From the NCBI RefSeq assembly GCF_006345805.1, contig NC_043002.1, positions 72,850,001 to 72,914,000 on the forward strand: a stretch of DNA of 64,000 nucleotides, in the 5' to 3' direction. This DNA comes from Octopus sinensis (Eukaryota). The number at the start of each line of letters is the position of its first letter. The stretch's first letter is position 1. Below the pieces are notes generated by a model. The model ran no database searches and was not told the origin of the DNA. It worked only from the letters and a program-made list of their open reading frames with translations. Both the position numbers and the translations under genes were made by a program. This document shows positions 9,506 to 60,150 of this stretch, piece by piece.

Positions 9506-10697
9506 TATGATCATCCTATTAATAATGCAGTTTTTTCAATTGCATGAACTAAAAGCTGGAGGGGGACAGGAAAAACTACCTGCACCAACTTGCTATAAAA
9601 GCTGGTAGTAATTTTACCTTATACTTATTCTTAGTGCAAGTTTTGAAGAGTGTGGTTCGATTTTAAGTTATTTGTCAAAGCTATAATGGAAGTGACAAAG
9701 GAGTATATTTTGCTTTATGAGTTCAATAAAGGCAACAATGCAAGGAATATTATTGCAGTATATGGGGATCGGACAATCAGTGTAAGCCAGTGTCAATGGT
9801 AATTCCAGGAATTCCAAGCCGGAAACTACAGCCTAGAAAACGAGCCTCATCCTGGAAGATCTGTAGAGCTTGACAAGGAGGTCCTGCAAACCCTGGTGGC
9901 ATAAAATCACATAACTGTTGAGGAACTAGCAGAGAAACTTTGATTTGGTCATTCAACCATTCATCAACACCTGCATGCCATCAGAAAAGTCAGCAAATTG
10001 GGTCAATGGGTTCCTCACAAACTTTCTGAGTCTAATTATGTACAGAAAGGGAATGTGTGCTCTTCTTTGCTGTCATACCTCACGAATAAACCATTTTTGA
10101 ACCAAATAGGGACTGGTGACAAGAAATGAGTTCTCTATGAAAATTGTCAAGTGCTGAAGACTGGAACACCCCAAGCTAAAGAAGGTCTTCACCCATGTAA
10201 GGTGTTATTATTTGTTTGGTAGGATATGAAAAGTTTAGCCCACTTTGAACTTTTAAACCCAAACCAAGTGATAACAAAGATCTACTGCAAGCAGCTTGAG
10301 TGGCTTAAGTCAGCGCTAGAAGAAAAACAACCATCTTTGGTTTCAAGACAAAAGGTGTTCTACCATCAGGATAATGCTTGGCCACATACAGTGCGGATGA
10401 CATTCCAAAGGATGGAGCAGTTTGAATGGGAAATGATGCCTCACCCACCATATTTGCCAAACATTGCCCCATCTGATTATAATTTATTCTGTAGATGAGG
10501 TCAGGACAGTACTGGAAGAGTATTTTTCATTACAGACAAGTGAATTTTGGAAGAGGGGCCATGCAAGTCTACCAGATAAATGGAAGAGCATTGTGGAAAA
10601 TGAAGGAGAGTATATTTTAGATTTAAAAGAAACTTTGTTTATCTTAATTTAGAAAAATAAAAGTATAAAAAAAACGCATTTTTATGGGATGACCCTA
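9506..10697 (+). mobile_element. Degenerate full-length mariner (DD34D, Mos1/SETMAR-like) transposon
   Basis: Broken transposase motifs WVPHKL (10007), TGDxKW, HQDNAWPH, PHPPYLPNIAPSDY; degenerate TIRs (..tcatcctattaataatgc / gcatttttatgggatgaccc) next to TA; stops and frameshifts. Confidence 0.9.
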
Positions 10698-36000: not shown

Positions 36001-39000
36001 TAAGTAAGATAATATTTCCCATGACTAGATATGCCTTGAAAGATTGAAAACAAAGGACACCACTTGTATGACAGTGACACTCATTTACAACTATCACATG
36101 ATGTCAAAGCAAGGAGACAGTAATACATCCACACACGTGTGACTGGCTTCTTTCAGTTTCTGTCTGACAAATCCTCTCACAAGGCTATGGTCAGCCTAGG
36201 GCAGCAGTAGAGGATGCTTGCCCAAGGTGCCAAGCAATGGGACTGAACCTAAAACCATGTGGCTGGGAAATAAACTTCTTATCCCACAGTCACACCTGAC
36301 CGGAAAGTCATTCACAGAAATATACTTAAACAGTTCAAGCTATAATATTTTAGATACATTTAGCAAAAAGATATTCATGGTGACTACAGGGATTTGATTG
36401 TACATGAAGAAGAATTAAAAGTACTACCTGATGTTTTTACAATATAAATTTATGGAGCAAAATATTGAGAATAACATAAGAAAAAAACCAAAATTTTATT
36501 AATCTTTAGAGAGAACTAGTTCCAACAAATATTTTTATTTAACCCTTCTGATACCCATCCACCCGAAACACCCCTGGCTCTATGATACAAATTTGATTTT
36601 AAAATGGTCTGAATGAAAAGTTTCCCTCAAAATTTCACGTTCATTTATGTTCTAAACATCAGCTTTTTAATAACAAAGTTAATAAATTTTTTATTATTTT
36701 CAAAATTAATCGGAACAAAATATATTTCAATAGAAATATGATAATAAAAGAATCAAAGCATGAGCAAATTATGATTATAAGATTTTTTGAGTCTAAAATG
36801 CTATCCTGGTGATCAAACCTGGTTGTCATAAAACGAAATCTAGCCATTAATTTTTTTTAATCCTGTTTAAAGAAAGAGCTAAATTAATTTCTGTTAGTTG
36901 ATGGGAACCAAAATTTACCATAAAAATTATAATAATTATAATCTATCTAAATTCAAAGTCATAAAGAAACAAAATAGTGAATGAATCCAAACTTACTTTG
37001 AATTCTTTTGTGCTAGCATACTCTTCGTCATCTACTTTAGAAAGAATTGTGCTGAAATCCATGGGCTTTTGAATGATACTTGAATAACCGGGAGCAATGA
37101 CATCATTAACTGGGAAGGCAAAGAAACCATGGGTATCTTTCCTATGAAAGAAATGAATAAAAGCAAAGGAATGAAAATGAAAGCAATTTGTTTTAAGTTA
37201 TTGTTTAGCCCCAGGTCAACACTGATCAGGAAGATCTATGATCACTGGCATAATGGTGGTATTTCTTTTTTCTTCAGACATCATATATCTATGTCTTCTT
37301 TACTCAATCTATCCTTCCTTTTTTTTTATAGCAGTACAGTGCAGTTTGAGATAGACTTAGCTGCTATTTGTAACTGGCCCCACAATGGCATAGAATGTTC
37401 TCCTTTGTCTTGATTTAGTTTATCAGCCAATTAAGAAAAGGCATTAATGAATCAACGTCTCTCACTTGATTTGGAGATCATACACACATGTATATACCCT
37501 CACTGTCACTTGCAAGCAAGTATAGCCTGATAGTATGTATCATGTTTTTGCAAATTGTTTTAAGTGCCTATGTATCCACGAGTAACCATAGATACAATTT
37601 TGGCCCTTCCACTCTTGATCTAGGGGAGCATTGAGGCTTGAGGGAAAGAGAGCTGCAATGAAAATGAATACCAGTATTTGGCTGGTACTTTCCATCAAAG
37701 TTTTATGCAAATTTATTTTCCAAATACAAGCTTAATAATTCTCTTTTACTCGTTTCAGTCAGTTGACTGCGGCCATGCTGGAGCACTGCCTTTAGTCGAG
37801 CAAATCGACCCCAGGACTTATTCGTTGTAAGCCTAGTACTTATTCTATCAGTCTCTTTTGTTGAACCGCTAAGTTACGGGGACGTAAACACATCACCATT
37901 GATTGTCAAGTGATGTTAGGGGGACAAACACAGACACACAAACATATATATACATACATACGACGGGCTTCTTTCAGTTTCCATCTACAAAATCCACTCA
38001 CAAGGCTTTGCTTGACCTGAGGCTATAGTAGAAGACACTTGCCCAAGGTGCCACGCAGTGGGAATGAACCCAGAACCATGTGGTTGGTAAGCAAGCTACA
38101 TGCCACACAGCCACTTCTGCGCCTAAAGTTATTTTACAAAATTAATTTAAATACTGCATTTCAAGAAATATGGTAAGAAAAGGGTTAAAGAAATGGAAGC
38201 AGATGTTCAGAGAATTACCTTTGGAATTGCTTTGTCATATACTTAAGGAACGTCTTCATGTTATTTGGTTCCTCTTCTTGGTTAGACAGTTTCATCCGTT
38301 TTTCAATAGGCTCATCATCTTCAGCTGCTTTATCTGGAGGATGCGGAGTGGATGTAGGAGGTGACAAAAATAACTGTTTTGCTGCAGGTGAGGAGTATGG
38401 TGGAGAATGTGAATGTAATTCAGATTCATATTCGTCACGCTCTCTTTTATGTGGACGTCCCTGCAAATGTAATTTTTGACCCTGATAATTAAGAGTCATC
38501 AAATATAGTAATGTTTATAGAAATGTCTTTTCAAAATAATAAAAAAAAAAAGGCTAGTTTCTCTTTCAGAAAGAAATGCAAACAAATACACATACATATT
38601 TATATCCAGAATGATCATAGAAAATCTCCAGAAATCCTATTAATTCTGAAATATAATAATAATAATGCCTTCAAATTCTTACACAAAGCCAGCAAAAGGA
38701 GAGCGGCTTTCTCCGTCCGTGTTGCGGATCCGTGGAATAAGCTGCCAGATGAGATAGTGAAGATGCCAACGACCGCTCGGTTCAAAGTCTCTCTTGATCG
38801 GAAATGGCCTGCACTCTTTGTATGACCATCCTCCCTGTCCCCCTACATGGCCTTGCTTTTGCTTTTTGAGCCAATTAAATTAAATTAACCCCAGTGCTCA
38901 ACTGGTACTTATTTTATCGACTCTAGTGGAAGCTGAACAAAGAGCGTAAAGATGGATGAAATGCCACTAAGCATTTTTCCAGGCATGTTAATAATTCTGC

Positions 39001-41902
39001 CTCAAAACTGTAAATAAAAAATGTAGACATTTTGTCTACCGCTCTACTAATCAAGCTCTATTGATTGTTATGTAGAAAAACCAACAGAAAGAACACAGTG
39101 AAATCGCTGAGGGAGGAGTTGAATGATCTAATGTTTCAGATAGAGCTCTTCTTCAAGGAATTAAAAGTTACAGAGCCAGTATCTGATGTGTATACTGAGA
39201 TCGTTGAAGAAACAAACAGAGAGGTTTTCCAGTGGGTTTGTTTCTCTGTAAAATAGAAACTCTGTCCTCTTTCTTTTTCTTTGTTGTCAATTTCACCTTG
39301 ATGATGATCTCTGAAATGTTCAATAATCCACTCCCTCACAACAATTTCATTGCATCCTTTCTTTCACTTTCACTTTTATCAAATAAAACAAGTCTTACTG
39401 ACACAGACCAGTCTCTTCAGATTCCGTTTTATCTACTGTCATTTGGCTAAGTCATATGTATGTACTTCATGGAAATATATTTGGCTTTATTAACCCTTAC
39501 TGTGTAAGAACCGAGTATAATTGCTTTTGATAGTGAGTTACTTTTCGGAATTCTACACAATTTTAATGGTTAATAATAGAAAGAAATTGTAAGAACTTTT
39601 TTGTACTCAATAATTGCACATTAGTACACAAAAATTTAATCAGTGTAGGGAGGGTTAAATATAATTGTGCGATTAGGTTTTAGCTGCTTAATGAAACTAA
39701 CACTTTAATTAGCATCTACAATGATATAAATTATAAAGTACAATTTTAGTCTTTGGTACAGCATTCATTGTGCACCCTAATATTTTATTTGCATTGTGGA
39801 CCCAGTGAACTAATAAGTCCTCTATTTAAAAAAAAAGAAAGAAAAAACAAGAAAAAGACAGAAAAACTTCTACTATGATTAGATATCCTGACAGAATTGT
39901 AAATGGAACTGTAGAAACTAAAATAAACATTTTGATCAGAGATTCTTTCACATTCCTTAACAAAACAAAAAATAAAAACCTCCAACAAGTGAGACAGATA
40001 AAAAAAAAGAGTATATTTATACATACATCTTCATGGTGTCTGTGTTTTTCTTTTTCACTGGATTTTTTCTTTTTCTTCTTTTTATGTTTATGCCTACGTT
40101 CTTCAGTATCCCCAGTATATACTTCAGGTACTGGTTCAGTAACTTTTAATACCAATTTCAGTGGTTTTTCAGATGGCTTCTCTGTGGAACATAAACAGAT
40201 TTTGATCATTTTTTCGCAGGAAAAGCAAATCATTTAAAACAAAAAAACAGTCAAACTGTGTGCATATATGTTCATGTGTGTATGCATGTATATATATGAG
40301 TGCGTGTGAGTGTGTGTGTGAATGTATGCAAATGTGTGTATGTGTAGTTTTAATTTATGGGTTTTATTATTGAGTAAATTTAACCAGTTCCCATTGGTTA
40401 GCAAAGTGCATCTGAGTAACCGACTGAACATTGTGATGACCTATAAACTAAATGCTTGTCTATCAGGTATCTATGGATATATATATATATATATCACACT
40501 TAAAAAAATTACCACTTTCCCCACCCCATAATCTACTGAATATTCTCCCTTTTACAAGATAAACATGTTCTGTGCAGATGTAACCCTTCAACAGCGAGAA
40601 ACCTGTTCTGATCTGGTCCCTTTTCTCACACTTAAATTCCTCATCTCCTATCATAAAGCTGCTTCTCTCAATGTTCATAATCTTGCAAGCTGCATGGATA
40701 GAACATGAATATCAACCTTTTACTATTTAATCTGGCTGTCTCCTTTCCAAGATTTCTGTATTGCTGGTTACTTGGTGACCCTGTCAGTGCTGGTACCACC
40801 TAAAAAGCATTCAGTCCACACTGTAAAGTGGTTGGCATTTGGAAGGGCATCCAATTGTAAAAACCATGCCAAAACTGACCTCATCTGTGCTGGTGCCATA
40901 TAAAATGCACTCATTCCACTCTGTAGGGTGGTTGGTGTTAGGAAGGGTATCCAGCTATAAAAGCCATGCCAAAACAGACATAGAAGTCTGGTGCAGTCTT
41001 CTGCCTGACCAGCTTCTCTCAAACCATCCAACCCAGCATGGAAGACAGATATTAAACGATGATGAAATCAGGCTAAAATATTCTACCTGTTTTATGTTCA
41101 AACTGGCCTGATCTGACCTCTCACACCTACCCTATGAAGTCATTCAAAAAAATATATAATCACATCATAGACATCTCAAAGCTACAAGAGAATGCATGAT
41201 TAATTCAAAATAATGTGAACAAATAATTATTACAATTGACAGAATAATCTGAATGCTGAAGGGTTAAATGACCATGATGATGATTTAATTAATTTTAACT
41301 GGAAAATAGTAATTTCCAACTTTAGCAAGGAGGAGATGTGTAATTAATTTAATCACCAACTCCAGTACTTGACTGCTACTTATCTGACCAACACTGGAAG
41401 GGTGAAAAGTAAAGATGACCTTGATGGTTTTGAACTTAGAATGTAAAGGGATGGAATGAAATATTGATTTCTACAGTAGAAATAATGCCACAAATTTCAG
41501 TGGTGGATCATCTTCAACATTTAATGTCCAGTTTTTCCATGTCTGCATGGGTCAGATGGAATTTGTTTGAAGCAAATTTTCTATGGCTGGATGTTCTTCC
41601 TGGTGCCAACCCTCAACTGCTTTCAAGCAATCTAATACTCTCTAGTGGCTTTACATGCTTTTCAGAGAAGACTGGAAACAAACAATCTCACTTGATGATG
41701 ATGATGATGACTCATTTACAACTGTCATGTGCGTCTAGATACAGGTAAACACAAACAAAGTTTGCTTTCTTAGAAGCGTTGAGATGTATTGAAATATACA
41801 GATATGGAAATATTTGATTCTCAAACGCATAATACTAATAATGCTGAATAGCATAAACAAGATAGAACATCCTTATTTTGCAGAAAAATTTGTTCGTGGC
41901 CA

Positions 41903-43769: not shown

Positions 43770-44570
43770 TACAGATACAATAACAGAAGTAAAATTAGTA
43801 AGATATTTTAAGGCTACACATATCAATGTTTTAAACACGATTTGAAACAACAACATACAACCTCTGAGTATTTAACACATTAACTATTTGGAAACAAATT
43901 CTCTTTGATTTGATAATCACCGTCAAGGTCTAAAGCTGTCGTAGGTTTATTCTGTTCTAATAATGTTATTGAATTGTAATGTATAGGATTAAATGATCAC
44001 TAATTAATAATCAATCGTTCTATAGATGAAAGGTAGACATCAAAGAATTTAGAACTATATTTTGAATTCTAGAAAAATAATAAAACAAAATTTAAGATAA
44101 ATATTTTCGTTCATAGCAAACTATCGATAATCTGATCGGCTCAAACGTTCCAAGATTTAGTATTATTTTCATTTATAATTTTTTTTTTTTTTTTTACAAA
44201 ATATAGGTCGGAAACGGTAGTGTTAAAACAAAGCAACATATTTTTTTAGAAATGTTTCTTTTTTTCCTCTAAACAAACTCATTTTTTAAATAAAAGTAAT
44301 ATTAATAATTTGTTTTAAATTTAAATTAAAGATAAACTTGACTAATAAAAAAACACAATAATAAATTCGATTATTAAAAAAAAGACGAGACAAATGTATC
44401 CATTGTTTTGCGAAATAGTTAAAGATCTGTACAAGCTTTAAAGAATCGGAACATTTTGATAAGATCTGGTAGACTTTTGAATTAAAGCATACAAAGTTTT
44501 AGATACACTTACCCTCAAGCTCGAGTATTTTCTTATCAGATTTATGATGCTTCTTGTGTTTTTTGCCCAT
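17800..44570 (-). CDS. BRD7: Bromodomain-containing protein 7/9 (single BRD7/BRD9 orthologue, SWI/SNF subunit), 16 coding exons, 2082 nt, 693 aa
   Basis: Recognisable motifs: MGKKHKKH, EKPLKLVLKV, bromodomain GFFAFPV..IAPGYS.II.KPMDF and NAMIYNRPETIYY, DUF3512-like GFKEDKRNK / YLNYGPFSSYAP / YGDETGVQ. All 15 introns are GT-AG and all phases close. Confidence 0.95.
18105..18955 (-). mobile_element. Cluster of four SINE family B copies
   Basis: Repeated gatgaaaggcaaagttgacc..gaatttgaactc..ctgccagctc blocks separated by (AAT)n. Confidence 0.85.
19374..19414 (-). CDS. BRD7: BRD7/9 exon 15, 41 nt (ANKVTQELRELAKQ)
   Basis: Needed to bridge phase 1 to 0; TTTTGCAG acceptor, CAG|GTAAAC donor; resembles BRD7 AEQVTNNLKELAQQ. 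Confidence 0.88.
20352..20478. mobile_element. Tc1/mariner-type MITE, 127 bp
   Basis: 31-bp TIRs cagggtgtccacaaagtctaggtacatggag / ctccatgtacccagattttgtggacaccctg, TA TSD. Confidence 0.9.
20884..21042 (-). CDS. BRD7: BRD7/9 exon 14 (KEISKEKELQQKLDYTAGLIQDLHSTQHDRLSAKPPVHL...EAQL)
   Basis: Matches BRD7 C-terminal QKKLDETT..L..L...Q..RLS..PP motif; GTGAGT donor. Confidence 0.93.
22395..22618. mobile_element. piggyBac-like MITE family (other copies ~12056-12270, 25258-25522, 32060-32620, 41070-41270)
   Basis: ttaaccctttagcatt / aatgctaaagggttaa termini; shared core ...gtaggtgtgagaggccagatctggcc... Confidence 0.65.
22653..22734 (-). CDS. BRD7: BRD7/9 exon 13 (DPYDVDFESLKTLSSDLGMDLSFLDHF)
   Basis: TTAG acceptor, GTAAGT donor; phase 0/1. 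Confidence 0.88.
22790..23152. mobile_element. Helentron-associated non-autonomous element (HINE/DINE-1-like)
   Basis: Subterminal ..tgccaaggc and 3' ..ggaggt hairpin motifs; tttcatctgaatccatccagcggttct core. Confidence 0.55.
24399..24488 (-). CDS. BRD7: BRD7/9 exon 12 (RKKEESKKQAQAAAELDQAMAAASADTSSQ)
   Basis: TGTAG acceptor, CAG|GTAATT donor; phase 0/0. Confidence 0.82.
24771..24878 (-). pseudogene. 5S rRNA-derived sequence (5S pseudogene or SINE3 head)
   Basis: Minus strand TTGAAAGCACCGGTTCTCATCCGATCACCAAAGTTAAGCAACGTCGAGCCTAGTTAGTACTTAGATGGGTGACCGC...GGTGCTGTA matches metazoan 5S; 5' end lost, scattered substitutions, single copy. Confidence 0.9.
25076..25187 (-). CDS. BRD7: BRD7/9 exon 11 (IMAFADSTGDYTIKMVDNLLDVLTNGEHSRVQGQIDQ)
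   Basis: LLDVLTxGxHSR motif; TAG acceptor, GTAAGG donor. Confidence 0.94.
26854..26989 (-). CDS. BRD7: BRD7/9 exon 10 (SYLNYGPFSSYAPSFDSSFANITKEESDMLMTTYGDETGVQYAK)
   Basis: Strong match to remembered BRD7/BRD9 motif; phase 1/2. Confidence 0.95.
28107..28217 (-). CDS. BRD7: BRD7/9 exon 9 (SDTEKVVNLGGLASKLTNGTGVLTGFKEDKRNKISP)
   Basis: GFKEDKRNK motif; phase 1/1. Confidence 0.94.
29433..29505 (-). CDS. BRD7: BRD7/9 exon 8 (YGFLRRRKDGSTSLTILNPENDGK)
   Basis: TTTCAG acceptor, GTATGG donor; DUF3512-like DGxTxL motif. Confidence 0.92.
30526..30816. mobile_element. hAT (Charlie-like) MITE
   Basis: TIR cagtggtt.../...aaccactg; perfect 8-bp TSD ATTTAACT (30518-30525, 30817-30824); related fragment begins at 29797. 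Confidence 0.9.
30951..31149. repeat. ~90-bp inverted repeat of Penelope-like pLTR sequence carrying hammerhead motifs
   Basis: Arms 30951-31040 and 31065-31149; CTGAAGA..GAAACGTT core. Confidence 0.75.
31526..31643 (-). CDS. BRD7: BRD7/9 exon 7 (LSRFEAIPDNMTPEEILAQARAAAKEAADLLTLRQPKAQ)
   Basis: CAG acceptor, GTAAAA donor; phase 2/0. Confidence 0.9.
32667..32842 (-). CDS. BRD7: BRD7/9 exon 6 (ENLLGMKRNLDFM...KKHKKQKT)
   Basis: CAG acceptor, GTAAGA donor; open frame, phase 0/2. Confidence 0.9.
33458..33747 (-). mobile_element. SINE family E
   Basis: Paralogous to 9224-9485. Confidence 0.85.
34425..34760 (-). mobile_element. SINE family A, full copy
   Basis: Reverse complement of family A. 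Confidence 0.88.
34877..34987 (-). CDS. BRD7: BRD7/9 exon 5, bromodomain C half (KDFILMCQNAMIYNRPETIYYKEARRLLHMGVKQLSK)
   Basis: Conserved acetyl-lysine-binding Asn; CAG acceptor, GTATGA donor. Confidence 0.96.
35103..35470 (-). mobile_element. RTE 3'UTR-type repeat (family C); >15 copies, e.g. 19498, 23153, 40770, 48860, 54205, 55341, 55520, 60930, 61795
   Basis: ggttggcgttaggaagggcatccagctgtagaaa core, ~65-nt internal tandem units, (GAT)n tail; same as the 3' UTR at 14420-14904. Confidence 0.88.
36997..37141 (-). CDS. BRD7: BRD7/9 exon 4, bromodomain N half (KDTHGFFAFPVNDVIAPGYSSIIQKPMDF...EFK)
   Basis: Bromodomain ZA-loop motif; TAG acceptor, GTAAGT donor. Confidence 0.96.
37745..38125 (-). 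mobile_element. SINE family A, full copy
   Basis: Reverse complement of family A. Confidence 0.9.
38219..38460 (-). CDS. BRD7: BRD7/9 exon 3 (GRPHKRERDEY...KYMTKQFQR)
   Basis: TTTGCAG acceptor, AG|GTAATT donor; phase 0/2. Confidence 0.92.
38694..38888 (+). mobile_element. CR1/L2-type LINE 3' fragment inserted in a SINE
   Basis: RRAAFSVRVADPWNKLPDEIVKMPTTARFKVSLD (CR1 FSxRVxxxWNxLP motif), (AATTA)n tail, CpGs intact. Confidence 0.8.
40027..40181 (-). CDS. BRD7: BRD7/9 exon 2 (EKPSEKPLKLVLKVTEPVPEVYTGDTEE...HHED)
   Basis: CCACAG acceptor, GTATGT donor; EKPLKLVLKV motif and Lys-rich tract. Confidence 0.95.
41900..42035. repeat. (TA)n/(TACA)n compound microsatellite
   Basis: Direct inspection. 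Confidence 0.9.
44513..44570 (-). CDS. BRD7: BRD7/9 coding exon 1 (MGKKHKKHHKSDKKILELE)
   Basis: ATG at 44570-44568; donor G|GTAAGT; phase 1. Confidence 0.93.
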
Positions 44571-46334
44571 TCTTTCCCAACTTGAAAATATTTCAGGAAA
44601 ACAAGCCGGGATCCCTATTAATAACAGACATGCGTACAATGAAACTGGTTATTTGCCCTCACTAAAAATAGTTCCGGGTAACCTTGAAAACTGATGAATG
44701 CACTTCTTTTTCCTTCATAAAGTAATTAAAAGGCAACAAAATACCAAATATACTTATACACAACGTTACAAAACGTTTATTTTGTAAAATAAAATACTAA
44801 TTTGATATTAAATATTGATTTTCTCTTTTAAAATCATTTATAAAATTATATTTAGAAAGAAAAGTTGACACCGGTTATAGTTTTGCAACAGTATTATTTT
44901 GGTTGTTTTCAAAAGCAGAAGATATATTTATTTTGTATTTATATGATTGTTTTTATCATAGCATTAATTTGAAACAAATTTCAAAAGATATTTTTGTAAT
45001 TTAAATTTTTAAACAGTTTTTAATTCATTTAATCGTTTTGCGATAAACCATAAAATGGGGAGTAAATTGAACTTCTGAAATGACTTAATTTTCGCTCTGA
45101 AAATGTGGAATTTAACTAAAATGTAAGTTGTACAATTTTAATAACGATAATAAATGAGAATATTTTACTTTTAATTATCATTTTTCTTCTCAAACCAACA
45201 ATATTGTTGCCGATACCGTAAATACATTTGAAGGTCGTTTACAAACGTGTTATATCACGTTGGCTGAATGTAAACATGAACTTATCGTTATTTTATGCAG
45301 TTAATTTATACTTAATTCTTTAGTTGTTATATAAATTGTATTTTTTGATCCAATAAGCCGGTATATACATATTGTCATTCATGACTTTATCAGATAAAAG
45401 TTTCTTTATTTAATGTAACTCAAAACGTGTCACTCATCTCGTCCTGATTCACTAAAGTACTTGTTCTTTAAAAAAGTTGTTTTTGTTTAGAATACACTTG
45501 AAATTCCATTCATTCTCTGAATTTTCTCCTTTTTTTTTTTATTTAAAAGACTGACACCAATAATACGATCTTAGGATTAATAAATGTAATGTGTAAAGCA
45601 GATGAATTTATTAAAAATCGTGGTGTCGACGTTCAAAACAGCAATGTTTTGAATGAAAAATCAAATTCTACTCTAAGGATTCATTTTGGTACTTTCAAAA
45701 GTTATTCATTAAAACTATATTGGATTTTCAACGAACACGTGTTTGTTACGATGCTTTAATTATAATGTGCTGTCCTCTGGTGTATTACACCACTTTTTAA
45801 ATGCTTATCTTATGTAATGTTTTCAAAATTCGTGTATGATTTATTAGTAATCATAAATCTGTTGCATCGTACACCAAAATGTTCTTACTTTATTAATTCT
45901 AAATAGTAGAAATGCGTTACCGGCGAGCAGTGTCTACAACCTGGTTTCGGTTCCCAGTTGCAACAATTTATTTACCTTACGTCACTAATACTCTTGAGAA
46001 TGTCCCACCATCTCCTTTTTCCCGCCACTAATAATATAAGAAAAGTACAAATATGCATAATAATTTGTGTTTATGCTGTTGAACTGTTTTAACCGTTCAT
46101 CCACGTAGATCATAACTAGTTTCCTCAGATTTTGCTGTTTAAATATGAGACCTCGAGTGTTTATTACAAATCGAAACATTAAAATTTCTAAATTTATGGT
46201 AAAGTGCGAGGCTAATTCTTGTAGAAAATGTGTTATCGATTCAGTCGATCGTAGTATGTTATTGGTATTTTATTTATTGATCCCAGAGGAATAAACAATA
46301 ACATCGATCCCGTATGGGGTTTGGAGTTAGAACC

Positions 46335-46900
46335 TAGAAAGATCATCATCACCATCATGGTTTGGATCCGTTTTTCCAAGCTGACTGAAAAGTTTCGCTG
46401 TACAGCAAATTGCTGCCAATCTTGGTCTTTGGTCATCACATTTCTGAAGCACGATTCCATGATAATTAATCTTAACACTTGTTTTTGAACTTTTCTTAGT
46501 CTTCTTCTTCTTCCATGGCCACCCTGCCTCACATATTTTTCACTTAGCTCGTCCATCCACATCACAAGTTCTTATCACTGTAGTTATCTATTCTTTACAC
46601 TTCGACTGTTGCTTGTAATGTTGTCGTTGTACTCAATTTCGTCTCTCTTTTTTTTTTATGGCAGTCACTATTACACACCCAATTAACCATACATTTCATT
46701 TCTTTCCAGCCATGACCATCCCATCCTTTATGTATATCTAAGACTGCATTGTCCAACGTGTCTTCCATTTCGTGATTTGAGGGAGATTTAGCATGTCGAG
46801 CAATCGTATAGAAGTTCATTGGTTCTGGTTTTTCTCGCCCTTCCAGTGAATAAATCTTTCACCTGTTCGAAGAATAACTTTTCTTTTTTTTTTCTGGAAG
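46335..46900 (-). mobile_element. Decayed RTE-like LINE 3' end
   Basis: WDGHG (cf. WxGH), DWQQFAV (also at 42830), tail ggaaaaacggatccaaaccatgatggtgatgatgat like other RTE tails. Confidence 0.5.
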
Positions 46901-58894: not shown

Positions 58895-60150
58895 TAGGCA
58901 CAGGAATGGCTGTGTGGTTAAAGAGCTCGCTTTGCAACCATGTCGTTTTGGGTTTAGTTCCACTGTGTAGCACCTTGGGCAGATGTATTTTGCTTTAGTC
59001 CTTGTGAAGGAATTTGGTAGACAGAAAATTTGGAAGTCCTTTGTGTCTGAGTTTGTTACCCCCCTCCCCCCACCGCTTGATAACCATGTTGTTTGGTTAC
59101 TACGTATGTCAGTTGATACGTATGTCAGTGCTACGTATGTCAGTTGATACCATCTCTGGCAAGGGCTTTGAAAAAAAACCAAGAAGAAGTTCCAGACACC
59201 CAGCTGAGTACTTGACAGACACTGACTTTGCTGACGACATCGCTCTTATCAGTGATTCTCTCTCCAATGACCAGTCTCTTTTACAATCTCTTGAACAAGC
59301 CTCAAATTGTGTAGGTCTTTACCTCAATGAGACCAAAACTGAATACATAAACAAGTGCCTGTCCAACAGTAATTGCATCATCCACACTCTCAACAGTGCA
59401 CCTTTAAATATGGTTTCTGATTATAAATATCTTGGGTCATACATATCATCATCTGGAAAAGACTTTCTAACTAGAAAGGGTATGGCCTGGTCAGCCTGTA
59501 ATGACATGCATAAGATCTGGTCATCAAATCTAAGTAGAGACTTCAAACTTGAAATATTCAAAGCCACAGTCGAACCAATTCTACTATATGGCTCAGAAAC
59601 CTGGACGTTATCAAAGAAGCTTGAGAGGCGGTTGGATGGAACCTACACTCGCCTCCTTATGAGAGCTCAAAATCTCTCGTGGAGGCGCCATCCAACTAAA
59701 ATGCAAATATATGGGAAATTACCACCTGTGTCATCTCTTGTGAAAGGTAGGAGAGTCCAGTTTGCTGGACATTGTTGTAGAGCTGAAAAAGAAGTAATTT
59801 CTACTCTTCTCCTCTGGAAGCCATCTACTCGCAACACCAGAGGGCGCACACTCTCCTACCCTGATGTAATCTCCAGGGATACAGGCATCCAGCAACAGGA
59901 CCTCCGTAATGCTATGATGGACCGTGAAGTCTGGCGCAACATGGTAAATTCCATTGTCTCGACCATGGTCGAACAATGATGATGATGATTGGTTACTTCC
60001 CCATAGCCTAGCAGTTCAGTAAAAGAGACTGATAGAATAAGTGCCAGATTTAGGAAGAAACATAAGTGCTAGGGTCGATTTTTTCCGCCAAAATTCTTCA
60101 AGGTAGTGCTGTAGCATGGCCACAGTCCAATAACTAAAACAAATAAAATA
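58895..60150 (+). mobile_element. SINE family A split by the RTE LINE at 59102-59988
   Basis: 5' half 58895-59101; 3' half resumes at 59989. Confidence 0.8.
59102..59988 (+). mobile_element. Young 5'-truncated RTE-like LINE (RT C-terminal half) inserted into a SINE
   Basis: Uninterrupted ORF with DFADDIAL, YKYLGS, LLYGSETWTL, FAGHC; (GAT)n tail; 9-bp TSD TTGGTTACT at 59093-59101 and 59989-59997. Confidence 0.93.

What the first reader, a model, noticed from the sequence alone, without database searches (positions are those of the whole stretch)
39160..40150. Inverted copy of BRD7/9 exon 2 in the next intron: candidate editing-complementary sequence (ECS) for A-to-I recoding
SEEN: + strand 39160-39211 (attaaaagttacagagccagtatctgatgtgtatactgagatcgttgaagaa) matches the sense strand of exon 2 at 40150-40099 (attaaaagttactgaaccagtacctgaagtatatactggggatactgaagaa) at 41/52 nt. 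Weaker similarity extends over the exon 2 acceptor (atgtttcagatag vs atgttccacagag). The copy is unique sequence, not a SINE, and lies 887 nt downstream in intron 2 in inverted orientation, so the pre-mRNA can fold into an exon-intron duplex. Three exonic As face C (40135, 40120, 40107) and two G-U wobbles occur. Editing at 40107 would give T45A; paired As in K32, T34, Y41 and T42 could also recode. In the first 38 nt, 4 of 5 mismatches fall at third codon positions. KNOWN: coleoids recode extensively via ADAR; ADAR favours A opposite C; intronic ECSs drive recoding in vertebrate GRIA2. INFERENCE: an inverted exon duplication was kept as a cis editing guide (or splicing modulator) next to the conserved EKPLKLVLKV motif of a chromatin reader.
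Basis: partly seen in the sequence, partly recalled or inferred. Interest (0 to 1): 0.8.

Follow-up and report, generated by a model that had tools for sequence, protein, structure and literature searches.

The report
Inverted exon-2 copy in octopus BRD7/9 intron
A short piece of exon 2 of an octopus chromatin-reader gene was copied backwards into the next intron, so the unspliced RNA could fold into a double strand that editing enzymes might target, but the copy looks like a slowly decaying leftover rather than a maintained editing guide.

Summary
Window 39157-39211 (+) is an inverted copy of exon-2 bases 40153-40099 of a BRD7/9-family gene on the minus strand. Identity is 43/55, far above chance. 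There are only two copies in the 64 kb, 887 nt apart, and the copy lies inside the 1566-nt intron 2. The window is Octopus sinensis.

The copy is also present in O. vulgaris and O. bimaculoides. It is absent from Argonauta hians, Sepia pharaonis and one further cephalopod contig, so it is a lineage-specific inverted micro-duplication. The exon-intron duplex is energetically plausible (-75 kcal/mol; helix probability about 0.22, competing with a local intronic hairpin).

Evidence that it was "kept" as an editing guide is weak:
- The copy's divergence (10/55) is close to the exon's synonymous rate.
- Wobble pairs are not enriched among the mismatches.
- A 16-nt deletion trims the arm in O. vulgaris.
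- Conservation against O. bimaculoides (1/55) is matched by 16% of intron windows.
- Two of the three A:C mismatches are silent sites created by G-to-A changes in the exon.
- The third (T45A) is an A:U pair in O. bimaculoides.

No RNA data could be reached. The best reading is a neutral relic that may be edited incidentally. A functional editing guide is not excluded.

The parts
40027..40181 (-). Exon 2 of the BRD7/9-family gene (155 nt). It encodes E20-D71: EKPSEKPLKLVLKVTEPVPEVYTGDTEERRHKHKKKKKKKSSEKEKHRHHED.
   Evidence: Exact match and translation, acceptor ...ttccacag| and donor |gtatgt. Identical to XP_029637603.1.
40099..40153 (-). Exonic arm of the inverted repeat (L29-E47 region).
39157..39211 (+). 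Core of the inverted exon-2 copy. It reads like the exon sense strand on the + strand, so in the minus-strand pre-mRNA it is the complement of the exon. In the RNA duplex there are 43 Watson-Crick columns, 3 G:U and 9 mismatches.
39049..39104 (+). Probable degraded upstream part of the copy. It is collinear with exon-side 40206-40155 (last 25 nt of intron 1, the acceptor, and the first 27 nt of exon 2); 38 of 55 alignment columns match, with 3 gaps.
   Evidence: Local alignment score 24 against a null of 14.2 +/- 2.3, P=0.004.
39105..39156 (+). 52-nt spacer between the two parts of the copy.
   Evidence: (I16)
38461..40026 (-). Intron 2 (1566 nt), which hosts the copy.
39095..39350 (-). Local imperfect hairpin of the intronic RNA. 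It competes with the exon-copy duplex.
   Evidence: -67.5 kcal/mol, z = -2.85. Local partners have P about 0.77, against 0.22 for the long-range helix.
39206..39221 (+). 16 nt deleted in O. vulgaris (GAAGAAACAAACAGAG on +). The deletion removes the last 6 bases of the arm.
38219..38460 (-). Exon 3. An alternative acceptor 21 nt upstream (38481) gives RefSeq isoform X1.
44513..44570 (-). Coding part of exon 1 (MGKKHKKHHKSDKKILELE-).

Best explanation
The element is a lineage-specific inverted micro-duplication. It covers about 110 nt spanning the intron 1/exon 2 junction and the first about 83 nt of exon 2. It was inserted into intron 2 of the Octopus BRD7/9-family gene after the split from Argonauta and before the O. 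sinensis/O. bimaculoides split. Since then it has decayed at roughly the neutral rate.

Shown: because it is transcribed within the same pre-mRNA, it can pair with exon 2 across an ~890-nt loop into a 55-bp imperfect helix.

Inferred: in a coleoid nucleus rich in ADAR, this helix is a plausible incidental substrate before intron 2 is spliced out. Any editing is most likely a by-product. The most favoured sites (A opposite C at 40135 and 40120) are silent and would merely restore the ancestral G.

I do not think the copy has been maintained by selection as an editing guide.
For: - Real duplication, not chance and not a dispersed repeat.
- Window is O. sinensis, 100% identical to GCA_006345805.1 CM016864.1.
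- Copy present in O. vulgaris and O. bimaculoides. Absent from intron 2 or the whole locus in Argonauta hians, Sepia pharaonis and ENA contig L005.
- Timing: the copy shares the Octopus-specific cct and ggg states but keeps the ancestral G where the Octopus exon now has A. This places the duplication on the Octopus stem lineage.
- Neutral-like decay: 10 copy-side changes in 55 nt (0.18), against 2 synonymous exon changes in about 13 synonymous sites (0.15) over the same period (site count is my own estimate).
- Of 8 transition-derived mismatches, only 3 are G:U and 5 are A:C or C:A, so wobble is not enriched.
- The flanks of the duplicate are degraded or lost.
- A 16-nt deletion removes the arm's end in O. 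vulgaris.
- Against O. bimaculoides the core has 1/55 substitutions versus an intron mean of 8.5%. However, 40 of 250 55-nt intron windows are equally conserved, and 39396-39535 is more conserved.
- Duplex potential: -75.1 kcal/mol against shuffles at -36.4 +/- 4.9. The helix appears in the MFE of the 1841-nt pre-mRNA piece but with P about 0.22.
- 'Opposite C, ancestral G' is a documented route by which edited sites arise (PMC6360793).
Against: - The recent substitution deficit in the copy is nominally significant: 1/55, binomial P=0.046; 4/124 for 39125-39250, P=0.017.
- Both O. sinensis/O. bimaculoides differences inside the duplex leave O. bimaculoides with better pairing (U:G to C:G at 40108; A:C versus A:U at 40107). 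This could reflect selection for pairing or gene conversion.
- The O. vulgaris deletion spares the main 41-bp helix.
- Coleoids edit very widely, so a 55-bp helix is unlikely to be completely ignored by ADAR.
- No RNA data were available, so functional editing cannot be excluded.
Confidence: 0.55

Rival explanations
1. Functional editing complementary sequence. The intronic copy is maintained because the exon-intron duplex directs ADAR to recode exon 2 (K32, T34, Y41, T42, T45 ...) next to the conserved EKPLKLVLKV motif. Species-specific tuning would occur through the A:C mismatch at T45 in O. sinensis and O. vulgaris.
For: - An imperfect 55-bp helix interrupted every 12 bp or less, as in site-selective ADAR substrates.
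- -75 kcal/mol, far below shuffles, and present in the MFE and centroid of two fold contexts.
- Retained in three Octopus species with fewer substitutions than the intron mean.
- Exon 2 is the only one of 9 mapped exons with an inverted copy.
- The 5' neighbours of A 40107, 40120 and 40135 are U, U and A, not the disfavoured G.
- Decapodiform genomes or transcripts encode Ala at the T42 position, so A/G variation there is tolerated.
Against: - No editing evidence.
- Absent in Argonauta, Sepia and L005 although the peptide is conserved there.
- Long-term divergence is about equal to the synonymous rate, with no wobble enrichment.
- Two of three A:C sites are silent and caused by exon mutations. 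The T45 site is A:U in O. bimaculoides.
- A deletion trims the arm in O. vulgaris.
- A local intronic hairpin is predicted to out-compete the long-range helix, 0.77 versus 0.22.
- The conservation level is shared by 16% of intron windows.
Confidence: 0.2
2. Splicing or processing modulator. Pairing of the copy with the exon-2 acceptor region and exon body slows or alters use of exon 2 (skipping would shift the frame, since the exon is 155 nt) or removal of intron 2. This would tune BRD7/9 output independently of editing.
For: The predicted duplex can extend over the 3' splice site of exon 2. The collinear extension covers the acceptor. The copy lies in a short 1.57-kb intron, close to both splice sites.
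Against: - The acceptor-side similarity is weak (69% with gaps) and ambiguous between two alignments.
- RefSeq isoforms differ only at the exon-3 acceptor, not in exon-2 usage.
- Same neutral-like evolution as above.
- Nothing was tested at the RNA level.
Confidence: 0.08
3. Part of a mobile element or genome-wide dispersed repeat that happens to resemble exon 2, or that captured it.
For: A SINE-like dispersed repeat (at least 11 copies in the window) ends 27 nt from the copy's left edge. The surrounding 39095-39350 folds as a long hairpin, which is MITE-like.
Against: No other copy of 39023-39400 exists in the 64-kb window or in the 23-37 kb orthologous loci. The similarity is specifically to the adjacent exon and includes its intron/exon junction.
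Confidence: 0.05
4. A real exon or small ORF on the + strand (an antisense transcript using tttcag|ATAGAG...), meaning a partial paralogue rather than an RNA-structure element.
For: The + strand keeps an open frame of 39 codons in the exon's register, preceded by an AG.
Against: The ORF ends after 39 codons. It has no Pfam match, and no protein in the 5.8-billion-sequence collection resembles it (searches returned only true BRD7/9 exons). The amino-acid changes are radical (PLKLV to LFFKE). The O. vulgaris 16-nt deletion shifts the frame.
Confidence: 0.02

Closest known systems
Intronic editing complementary sequences of vertebrate GRIA2 (Q/R and R/G sites) and of Drosophila genes such as Syt1
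   Same: An intronic segment downstream of an exon is complementary to that exon. It can form an imperfect helix with A:C mismatches in the pre-mRNA, so editing would have to precede splicing (general knowledge; ECS concept summarised in PMC5705066).
   Different: Those sequences are defined by demonstrated editing and by deep conservation or covariation. Here editing is unobserved. The element is confined to one genus-level lineage, evolves at a neutral-like rate, and is still recognisable as a duplicate of the exon (43/55).
Inverted-repeat dsRNA (paired Alu/SINE or other nearby inverted copies) that is promiscuously edited by ADAR
   Same: Two inverted copies of one sequence within a single transcript, less than 1 kb apart, form intramolecular dsRNA. 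This is the main source of metazoan editing clusters (PMC9989829). This is what the element most likely works like.
   Different: The repeat is not a transposon. One arm is a coding exon, so any editing would hit coding sequence. The helix is short (55 bp) and 78% paired.
Editing sites born by G-to-A mutation opposite a retained C ('opposite C, ancestral G'; PMC6360793)
   Same: At 40135 and 40120 the exon mutated G to A while the copy kept the base that gives C in the RNA. This creates A:C mismatches.
   Different: Both sites are synonymous (GAA/GAG, GTA/GTG), so editing would restore the ancestral RNA base without recoding. Editing has not been observed.
Small inverted duplications from replication template switching or fold-back repair
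   Same: A short local inverted copy within about 1 kb of its source. It includes non-coding flank, so it was copied from DNA or unspliced RNA.
   Different: The mechanism cannot be reconstructed, because the junctions are too degraded.

Membership tests
Editing complementary sequence (ECS) | Complementary to the exon around the candidate sites, forming a helix of at least about 15-20 bp | tested here: met
   55 columns: 43 Watson-Crick, 3 G:U; longest perfect run 12 bp. Duplex -75.1 kcal/mol against shuffles at -36.4 +/- 4.9.
Editing complementary sequence (ECS) | In cis in the same primary transcript (intron of the same gene) | tested here: met
   The copy lies inside intron 2 (38461-40026) of the minus-strand gene.
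Editing complementary sequence (ECS) | A-to-I editing actually observed at the paired exon sites | not testable with these tools
   No Octopus transcript contigs in the collections. Published site tables that are held contain no BRD7/9 entry, and one of them is truncated.
Editing complementary sequence (ECS) | Helix predicted to form in the context of the whole exon and intron | tested here: inconclusive
   The helix is in the MFE (36 pairs) but P is about 0.22. A local hairpin has P about 0.77. In a shorter context it is absent from the MFE and present in the centroid.
Editing complementary sequence (ECS) | Evolutionary conservation or compensatory change of the intronic arm beyond the neutral level | tested here: inconclusive
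   For: 1/55 against 8.5% (P=0.046), and two one-sided changes that improve pairing in O. bimaculoides. Against: 16% of intron windows are equally conserved; there are no double-sided compensatory changes; long-term divergence is about the synonymous rate; the copy is absent outside Octopus; a deletion occurs in O. vulgaris.
Editing complementary sequence (ECS) | Editing depends on the element (deletion or mutation test) | not testable with these tools
   Needs a minigene or genome edit.
Dispersed repeat / SINE / MITE | Multiple copies elsewhere in the genome | tested here: not met
   Only the exon and the copy match, in 64 kb and in six loci. Genome-wide search was not possible.
BRD7/BRD9 family (host gene) | Bromodomain (PF00439) plus DUF3512 (PF12024), N-terminal MGKKHKKH and EKPLKLVLKV | tested here: met
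   Precomputed Pfam on P0001/P0122. Window exons are identical to XP_029637603.1.

The most novel reading that the evidence does not exclude
This is a snapshot of the birth of an editing guide in a coleoid. An exon fragment duplicated in inverted orientation into the adjacent intron created a new exon-intron helix in the Octopus lineage. Later point changes then created and tuned ADAR target sites in a chromatin-reader mRNA: G-to-A in the exon opposite a retained C, and U-to-C in the copy opposite T45 in O. sinensis and O. vulgaris only. The O. bimaculoides A:U versus O. sinensis A:C difference at T45 would serve as a natural experiment.
Probability: 0.15. Interest if true: 0.65.

Novelty: new member of a known kind. 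Interest (0 to 1): 0.3.

Why it matters
For most of the tens of thousands of coleoid recoding sites, the pairing partners that make the dsRNA are not mapped, and how new guide sequences arise is rarely visible. A still-recognisable inverted exon copy with a datable origin would give a clean, testable case. Three species carry it, relatives lack it, and the best-placed recoding adenosine (T45) faces C in two species and U in the third. It could show whether a fresh exon-intron helix is enough to start editing, and whether that editing is adaptive or a by-product. If it is only a decaying duplicate, it is an ordinary structural polymorphism of an intron. It would also be a caution that inverted exon copies alone do not indicate a maintained editing guide.

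Tried and rejected
1. Direct RNA evidence. Two protein-collection searches designed to pull Octopus transcript or WGS contigs covering exon 2 returned no Octopus contigs. The queries were the N-terminal 175 aa and the 135-aa stop-to-stop ORF across exon 2. They returned only a cuttlefish-like transcript fragment (P0010, Logan), the ENA cephalopod contig ORF P0133 and distant BRD7/9 fragments from other animals.
2. Published editing-site tables. Supplements of PMC9989829, PMC8382921 and PMC4384741 hold no BRD7/BRD9 entry, but the octopus table is truncated, so this says nothing. The Cell 2017 cephalopod paper was not found under the PMC id I recalled, nor in a title search. The 2023 octopus temperature paper did not turn up in a title search.
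3. The look-up of isoform X2 failed. Isoform X1 and the O. bimaculoides, O. vulgaris, Argonauta and Sepia proteins worked.
4. Direct-orientation copies of exon 2 in intron 2: none above the null. The best score was 26 against a 95th percentile of 25.
5. An apparent direct partial copy next to the inverted one in O. bimaculoides (E=0.007) was not supported in O. sinensis.
6. Coding constraint on the copy as the explanation for the third-position pattern: rejected. Outgroups show two of the four third-position differences are exon changes, and one copy change is nonsynonymous.
7. Known RNA family: Rfam gives only sub-threshold hits on a TG microsatellite.
8. + strand ORF as a protein: no Pfam hit.
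9. MITE or TE origin of the local hairpin: no other copies in the window.
Full report
**1. What is there**

The window's minus strand carries a BRD7/BRD9-family gene. A bromodomain probe and then a full-length probe located exons from 44570 down to about 17800.

The window is 100% identical over 2.1 kb to Octopus sinensis GCA_006345805.1 CM016864.1. All mapped exons are identical to RefSeq XP_029637603.1, 'bromodomain-containing protein 7 isoform X2', which carries PF00439 + PF12024.

The relevant gene model is:
- Exon 1 coding sequence: 44513-44570.
- Exon 2: 40027-40181 (155 nt; acceptor ttccacag|, donor |gtatgt).
- Intron 2: 38461-40026 (1566 nt).
- Exon 3: 38219-38460.

**2.

The repeat finder gives arms 39157-39211 and 40099-40153: 55 nt, 78% complementary, 887 nt apart.

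- The ungapped score is 26, against 10.3 +/- 1.2 (max 15) for shuffled intron.
- The gapped score is 54, against a null maximum of 29.
- A degenerate 35-mer finds only these two sites in 64 kb, with 0 expected.
- In the RNA duplex there are 43 Watson-Crick columns, 3 G:U and 9 mismatches. These include exon A opposite C at 40135, 40120 and 40107.
- The copy is unique in the window. The only dispersed repeat in the intron is 38868-39022.
- Of nine mapped exons, only exon 2 has an inverted copy within the gene.

Extent of the duplicate. Upstream of the core, the best and collinear match pairs exon side 40206-40155 with + strand 39049-39104 (P=0.004). That exon-side stretch covers the last 25 nt of intron 1, the acceptor and the first 27 nt of exon 2. 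The lysine-run half of the exon has no significant counterpart. Because the copy includes intron 1 sequence, it was copied from DNA or unspliced RNA, not from mRNA.

**3. Phylogenetic distribution**

I fetched orthologous loci through exact-protein look-ups:

| Locus | Species or source |
|---|---|
| L001 | Argonauta hians |
| L002 | O. bimaculoides |
| L003 | O. sinensis |
| L004 | O. vulgaris |
| L006 | Sepia pharaonis |
| L005 | Cephalopod contig in an ENA assembly |

The inverted copy is present at the orthologous place in all three Octopus species. It is absent from Argonauta intron 2 and from the whole Argonauta locus. It is also absent from the Sepia locus and from 6 kb either side of exon 2 in L005, where only lysine-run low-complexity matches appear. 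The exon-2 peptide is nevertheless almost invariant across all of these.

**4. Polarising the differences**

Argonauta, Sepia and L005 served as outgroups.

- Two of the twelve non-identical columns are changes in the Octopus exon made after the duplication: GAG to GAA at 40135 and GTG to GTA at 40120. The copy retains the ancestral G at both.
- This 'opposite C, ancestral G' configuration is a documented way for edited sites to arise in primates (PMC6360793). Here, editing would only restore the ancestral base silently.
- The copy shares the Octopus-specific cct and ggg states that Argonauta lacks. The duplication therefore occurred on the Octopus stem after the Argonauta split.
- The remaining ten differences are on the copy side: 10/55 = 0.18.
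- Over the same interval the exon accumulated 2 changes in roughly 13 synonymous sites, about 0.15 (the site count is my own).
- On these small numbers, the copy has therefore diverged at about the neutral rate.
- Of eight transition-derived mismatches, three are G:U and five are A:C or C:A. Helix-preserving outcomes are not enriched.
One of those (GAA to GAT) alters the amino acid, so it does not indicate coding constraint on the copy.

**5. Recent evolution**

O. sinensis versus O. bimaculoides:
- Intron 2 differs at 8.5% of aligned sites.
- The core copy differs at 1/55, and 39125-39250 at 4/124. The nominal binomial P values are 0.046 and 0.017.
- However, 40 of 250 55-nt intron windows are equally conserved, and 39396-39535 is more conserved.

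The two differences inside the duplex lie in adjacent columns:
- Exon 40108 is T in O. sinensis and C in O. bimaculoides (a synonymous GAT/GAC difference). This turns U:G into C:G.
- Copy 39203 gives RNA C in O. sinensis and O. vulgaris but U in O. bimaculoides. T45's adenosine therefore faces C in the former two and U in the latter.
- Both leave O. bimaculoides with better pairing: -78.9 against -75.1 kcal/mol.
- This is compatible with selection for pairing, with gene conversion between the copies, or with simple neutral change. O. bimaculoides keeping the ancestral state at 39203 is the most parsimonious reading.
- The CG/CA context makes the polarity uncertain.

O. vulgaris carries a 16-nt deletion (39206-39221) that removes the last six bases of the arm. 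The main 41-bp helix remains; the duplex energy falls to -65.3 kcal/mol.

**6. Can the helix form?**

- RNAduplex of the exon-2 region against the copy region gives -75.1 kcal/mol. Shuffled copies give -36.4 +/- 4.9 (min -54.3). It is the best partner among all tiles of intron 2.
- In a 1151-nt context the helix is absent from the MFE but present in the centroid.
- In an 1841-nt pre-mRNA context, 36 of its pairs are in the MFE, but pair probabilities are only about 0.22.
- The competitor, at about 0.77, is a local imperfect hairpin of the intron, 39095-39350 (-67.5 kcal/mol, z = -2.85).
- The structure is therefore thermodynamically competitive but not dominant. Kinetics cannot be judged here.

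**7. Interpretation**

Shown:
- A lineage-specific inverted micro-duplication of the intron 1/exon 2 junction lies in intron 2.
- It has duplex-forming potential.
- Its long-term divergence is neutral-like.
- Its recent conservation is only marginally above the intron average.

Inferred:
- In ADAR-rich coleoid neurons, the helix may be edited before splicing.
- The most favoured sites are silent, so any editing is probably a by-product.

I put 0.55 on a neutral relic (with or without incidental editing) and 0.2 on a maintained ECS. A splicing modulator, a genome-wide repeat and a + strand exon each get less. The + strand ORF has no Pfam hit. Rfam finds nothing in 38000-41200 beyond sub-threshold hits on a TG microsatellite.

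**8. What could not be done**

No Octopus transcript contigs are reachable through the protein collections. The editing-site supplements that are held do not list BRD7/9, but the octopus table is truncated. Whether exon 2 is edited therefore remains open.

Cuttlefish-type transcript-derived proteins of this gene (P0124 is from S. pharaonis; the other cluster members come from unnamed sequencing runs) differ from one another by S-to-G at two positions in the C-terminal domain. None differ in exon 2. This is consistent with editing elsewhere in this mRNA in a species lacking the copy, but it was not followed up.

**9. Comparison with known systems**

The element works most like nearby inverted repeats that form intramolecular dsRNA (PMC9989829). 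It has the geometry of a classical intronic ECS (PMC5705066).

It meets the structural criteria of an ECS: complementarity and cis location. It has not met the defining functional criteria of observed editing and dependence on the element. It is inconclusive on conservation and covariation. I therefore file it as a candidate, not as a member.

It is a new instance of a known kind of feature. Interest is modest unless RNA data show recoding.

Noticed in passing
window 38868-39022: SINE-like dispersed repeat with at least 11 other copies in the 64-kb window. It ends 27 nt from the left edge of the degraded exon copy.
   Followed up: partly
window 38461-38481: Alternative 3' splice site of exon 3, 21 nt upstream. 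It adds GQKLHLQ and distinguishes RefSeq isoform X1 (700 aa) from X2 (693 aa).
   Followed up: partly
window 39095-39350 (- strand RNA): The intron around the copy folds into a long imperfect hairpin (-67.5 kcal/mol, z -2.85). Arms at about 39108-39160 and 39295-39340 are themselves an inverted repeat of unknown origin. No other copies exist in the window.
   Followed up: partly
window 39396-39535: Intronic block with at most 1 substitution in about 140 nt between O. sinensis and O. bimaculoides. It is more conserved than the exon copy and has no obvious function.
   Followed up: no
window 38694-38882: About 189 nt present in O. sinensis and O. vulgaris but absent from O. bimaculoides intron 2, next to the SINE-like repeat.
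   Followed up: no
P0003, P0127, P0128 versus P0124 (cuttlefish-type BRD7 transcripts; L007, L008): Transcript-derived proteins differ by S-to-G at two sites (GPFSSYAPS/GPFGSYAPS and KLTSGTG/KLTGGTG), the typical signature of A-to-I recoding, in the DUF3512 region. None differ in exon 2. Alternative first exons (MFAEKP..., MEEKP...) are also seen.
   Followed up: no
window about 45100-46570 (+ strand); L003 1-1468, L004 1-1468, L001 1-1471, L006 1-464: A COX11 (PF04442) gene lies head-to-head upstream of the BRD7/9 gene in Octopus, Argonauta and Sepia. This is conserved divergent synteny across coleoids.
   Followed up: no
window 40257-40350: TG/TA-rich microsatellite just upstream of exon 2. 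It gives sub-threshold Rfam hits to mir-297 and mir-4012 (26 and 24 bits, against gathering scores of 90 and 80). These are artefacts of low complexity.
   Followed up: yes
window 59008-59976 (+) and 10223-10495 (+): Transposon remnants: a weak reverse-transcriptase match (RVT_1, E=1.7e-4, below cut-off) and a mariner-type transposase fragment (PF01359, E=5e-5).
   Followed up: partly
window 40188-40208 versus 39920-39938 (- strand): Direct near-repeat TGATCAAAA(TC)TGTTTAT(G/T)TT shared by the end of intron 1 and intron 2. Score 26 against a null 95th percentile of 25, so marginal.
   Followed up: no
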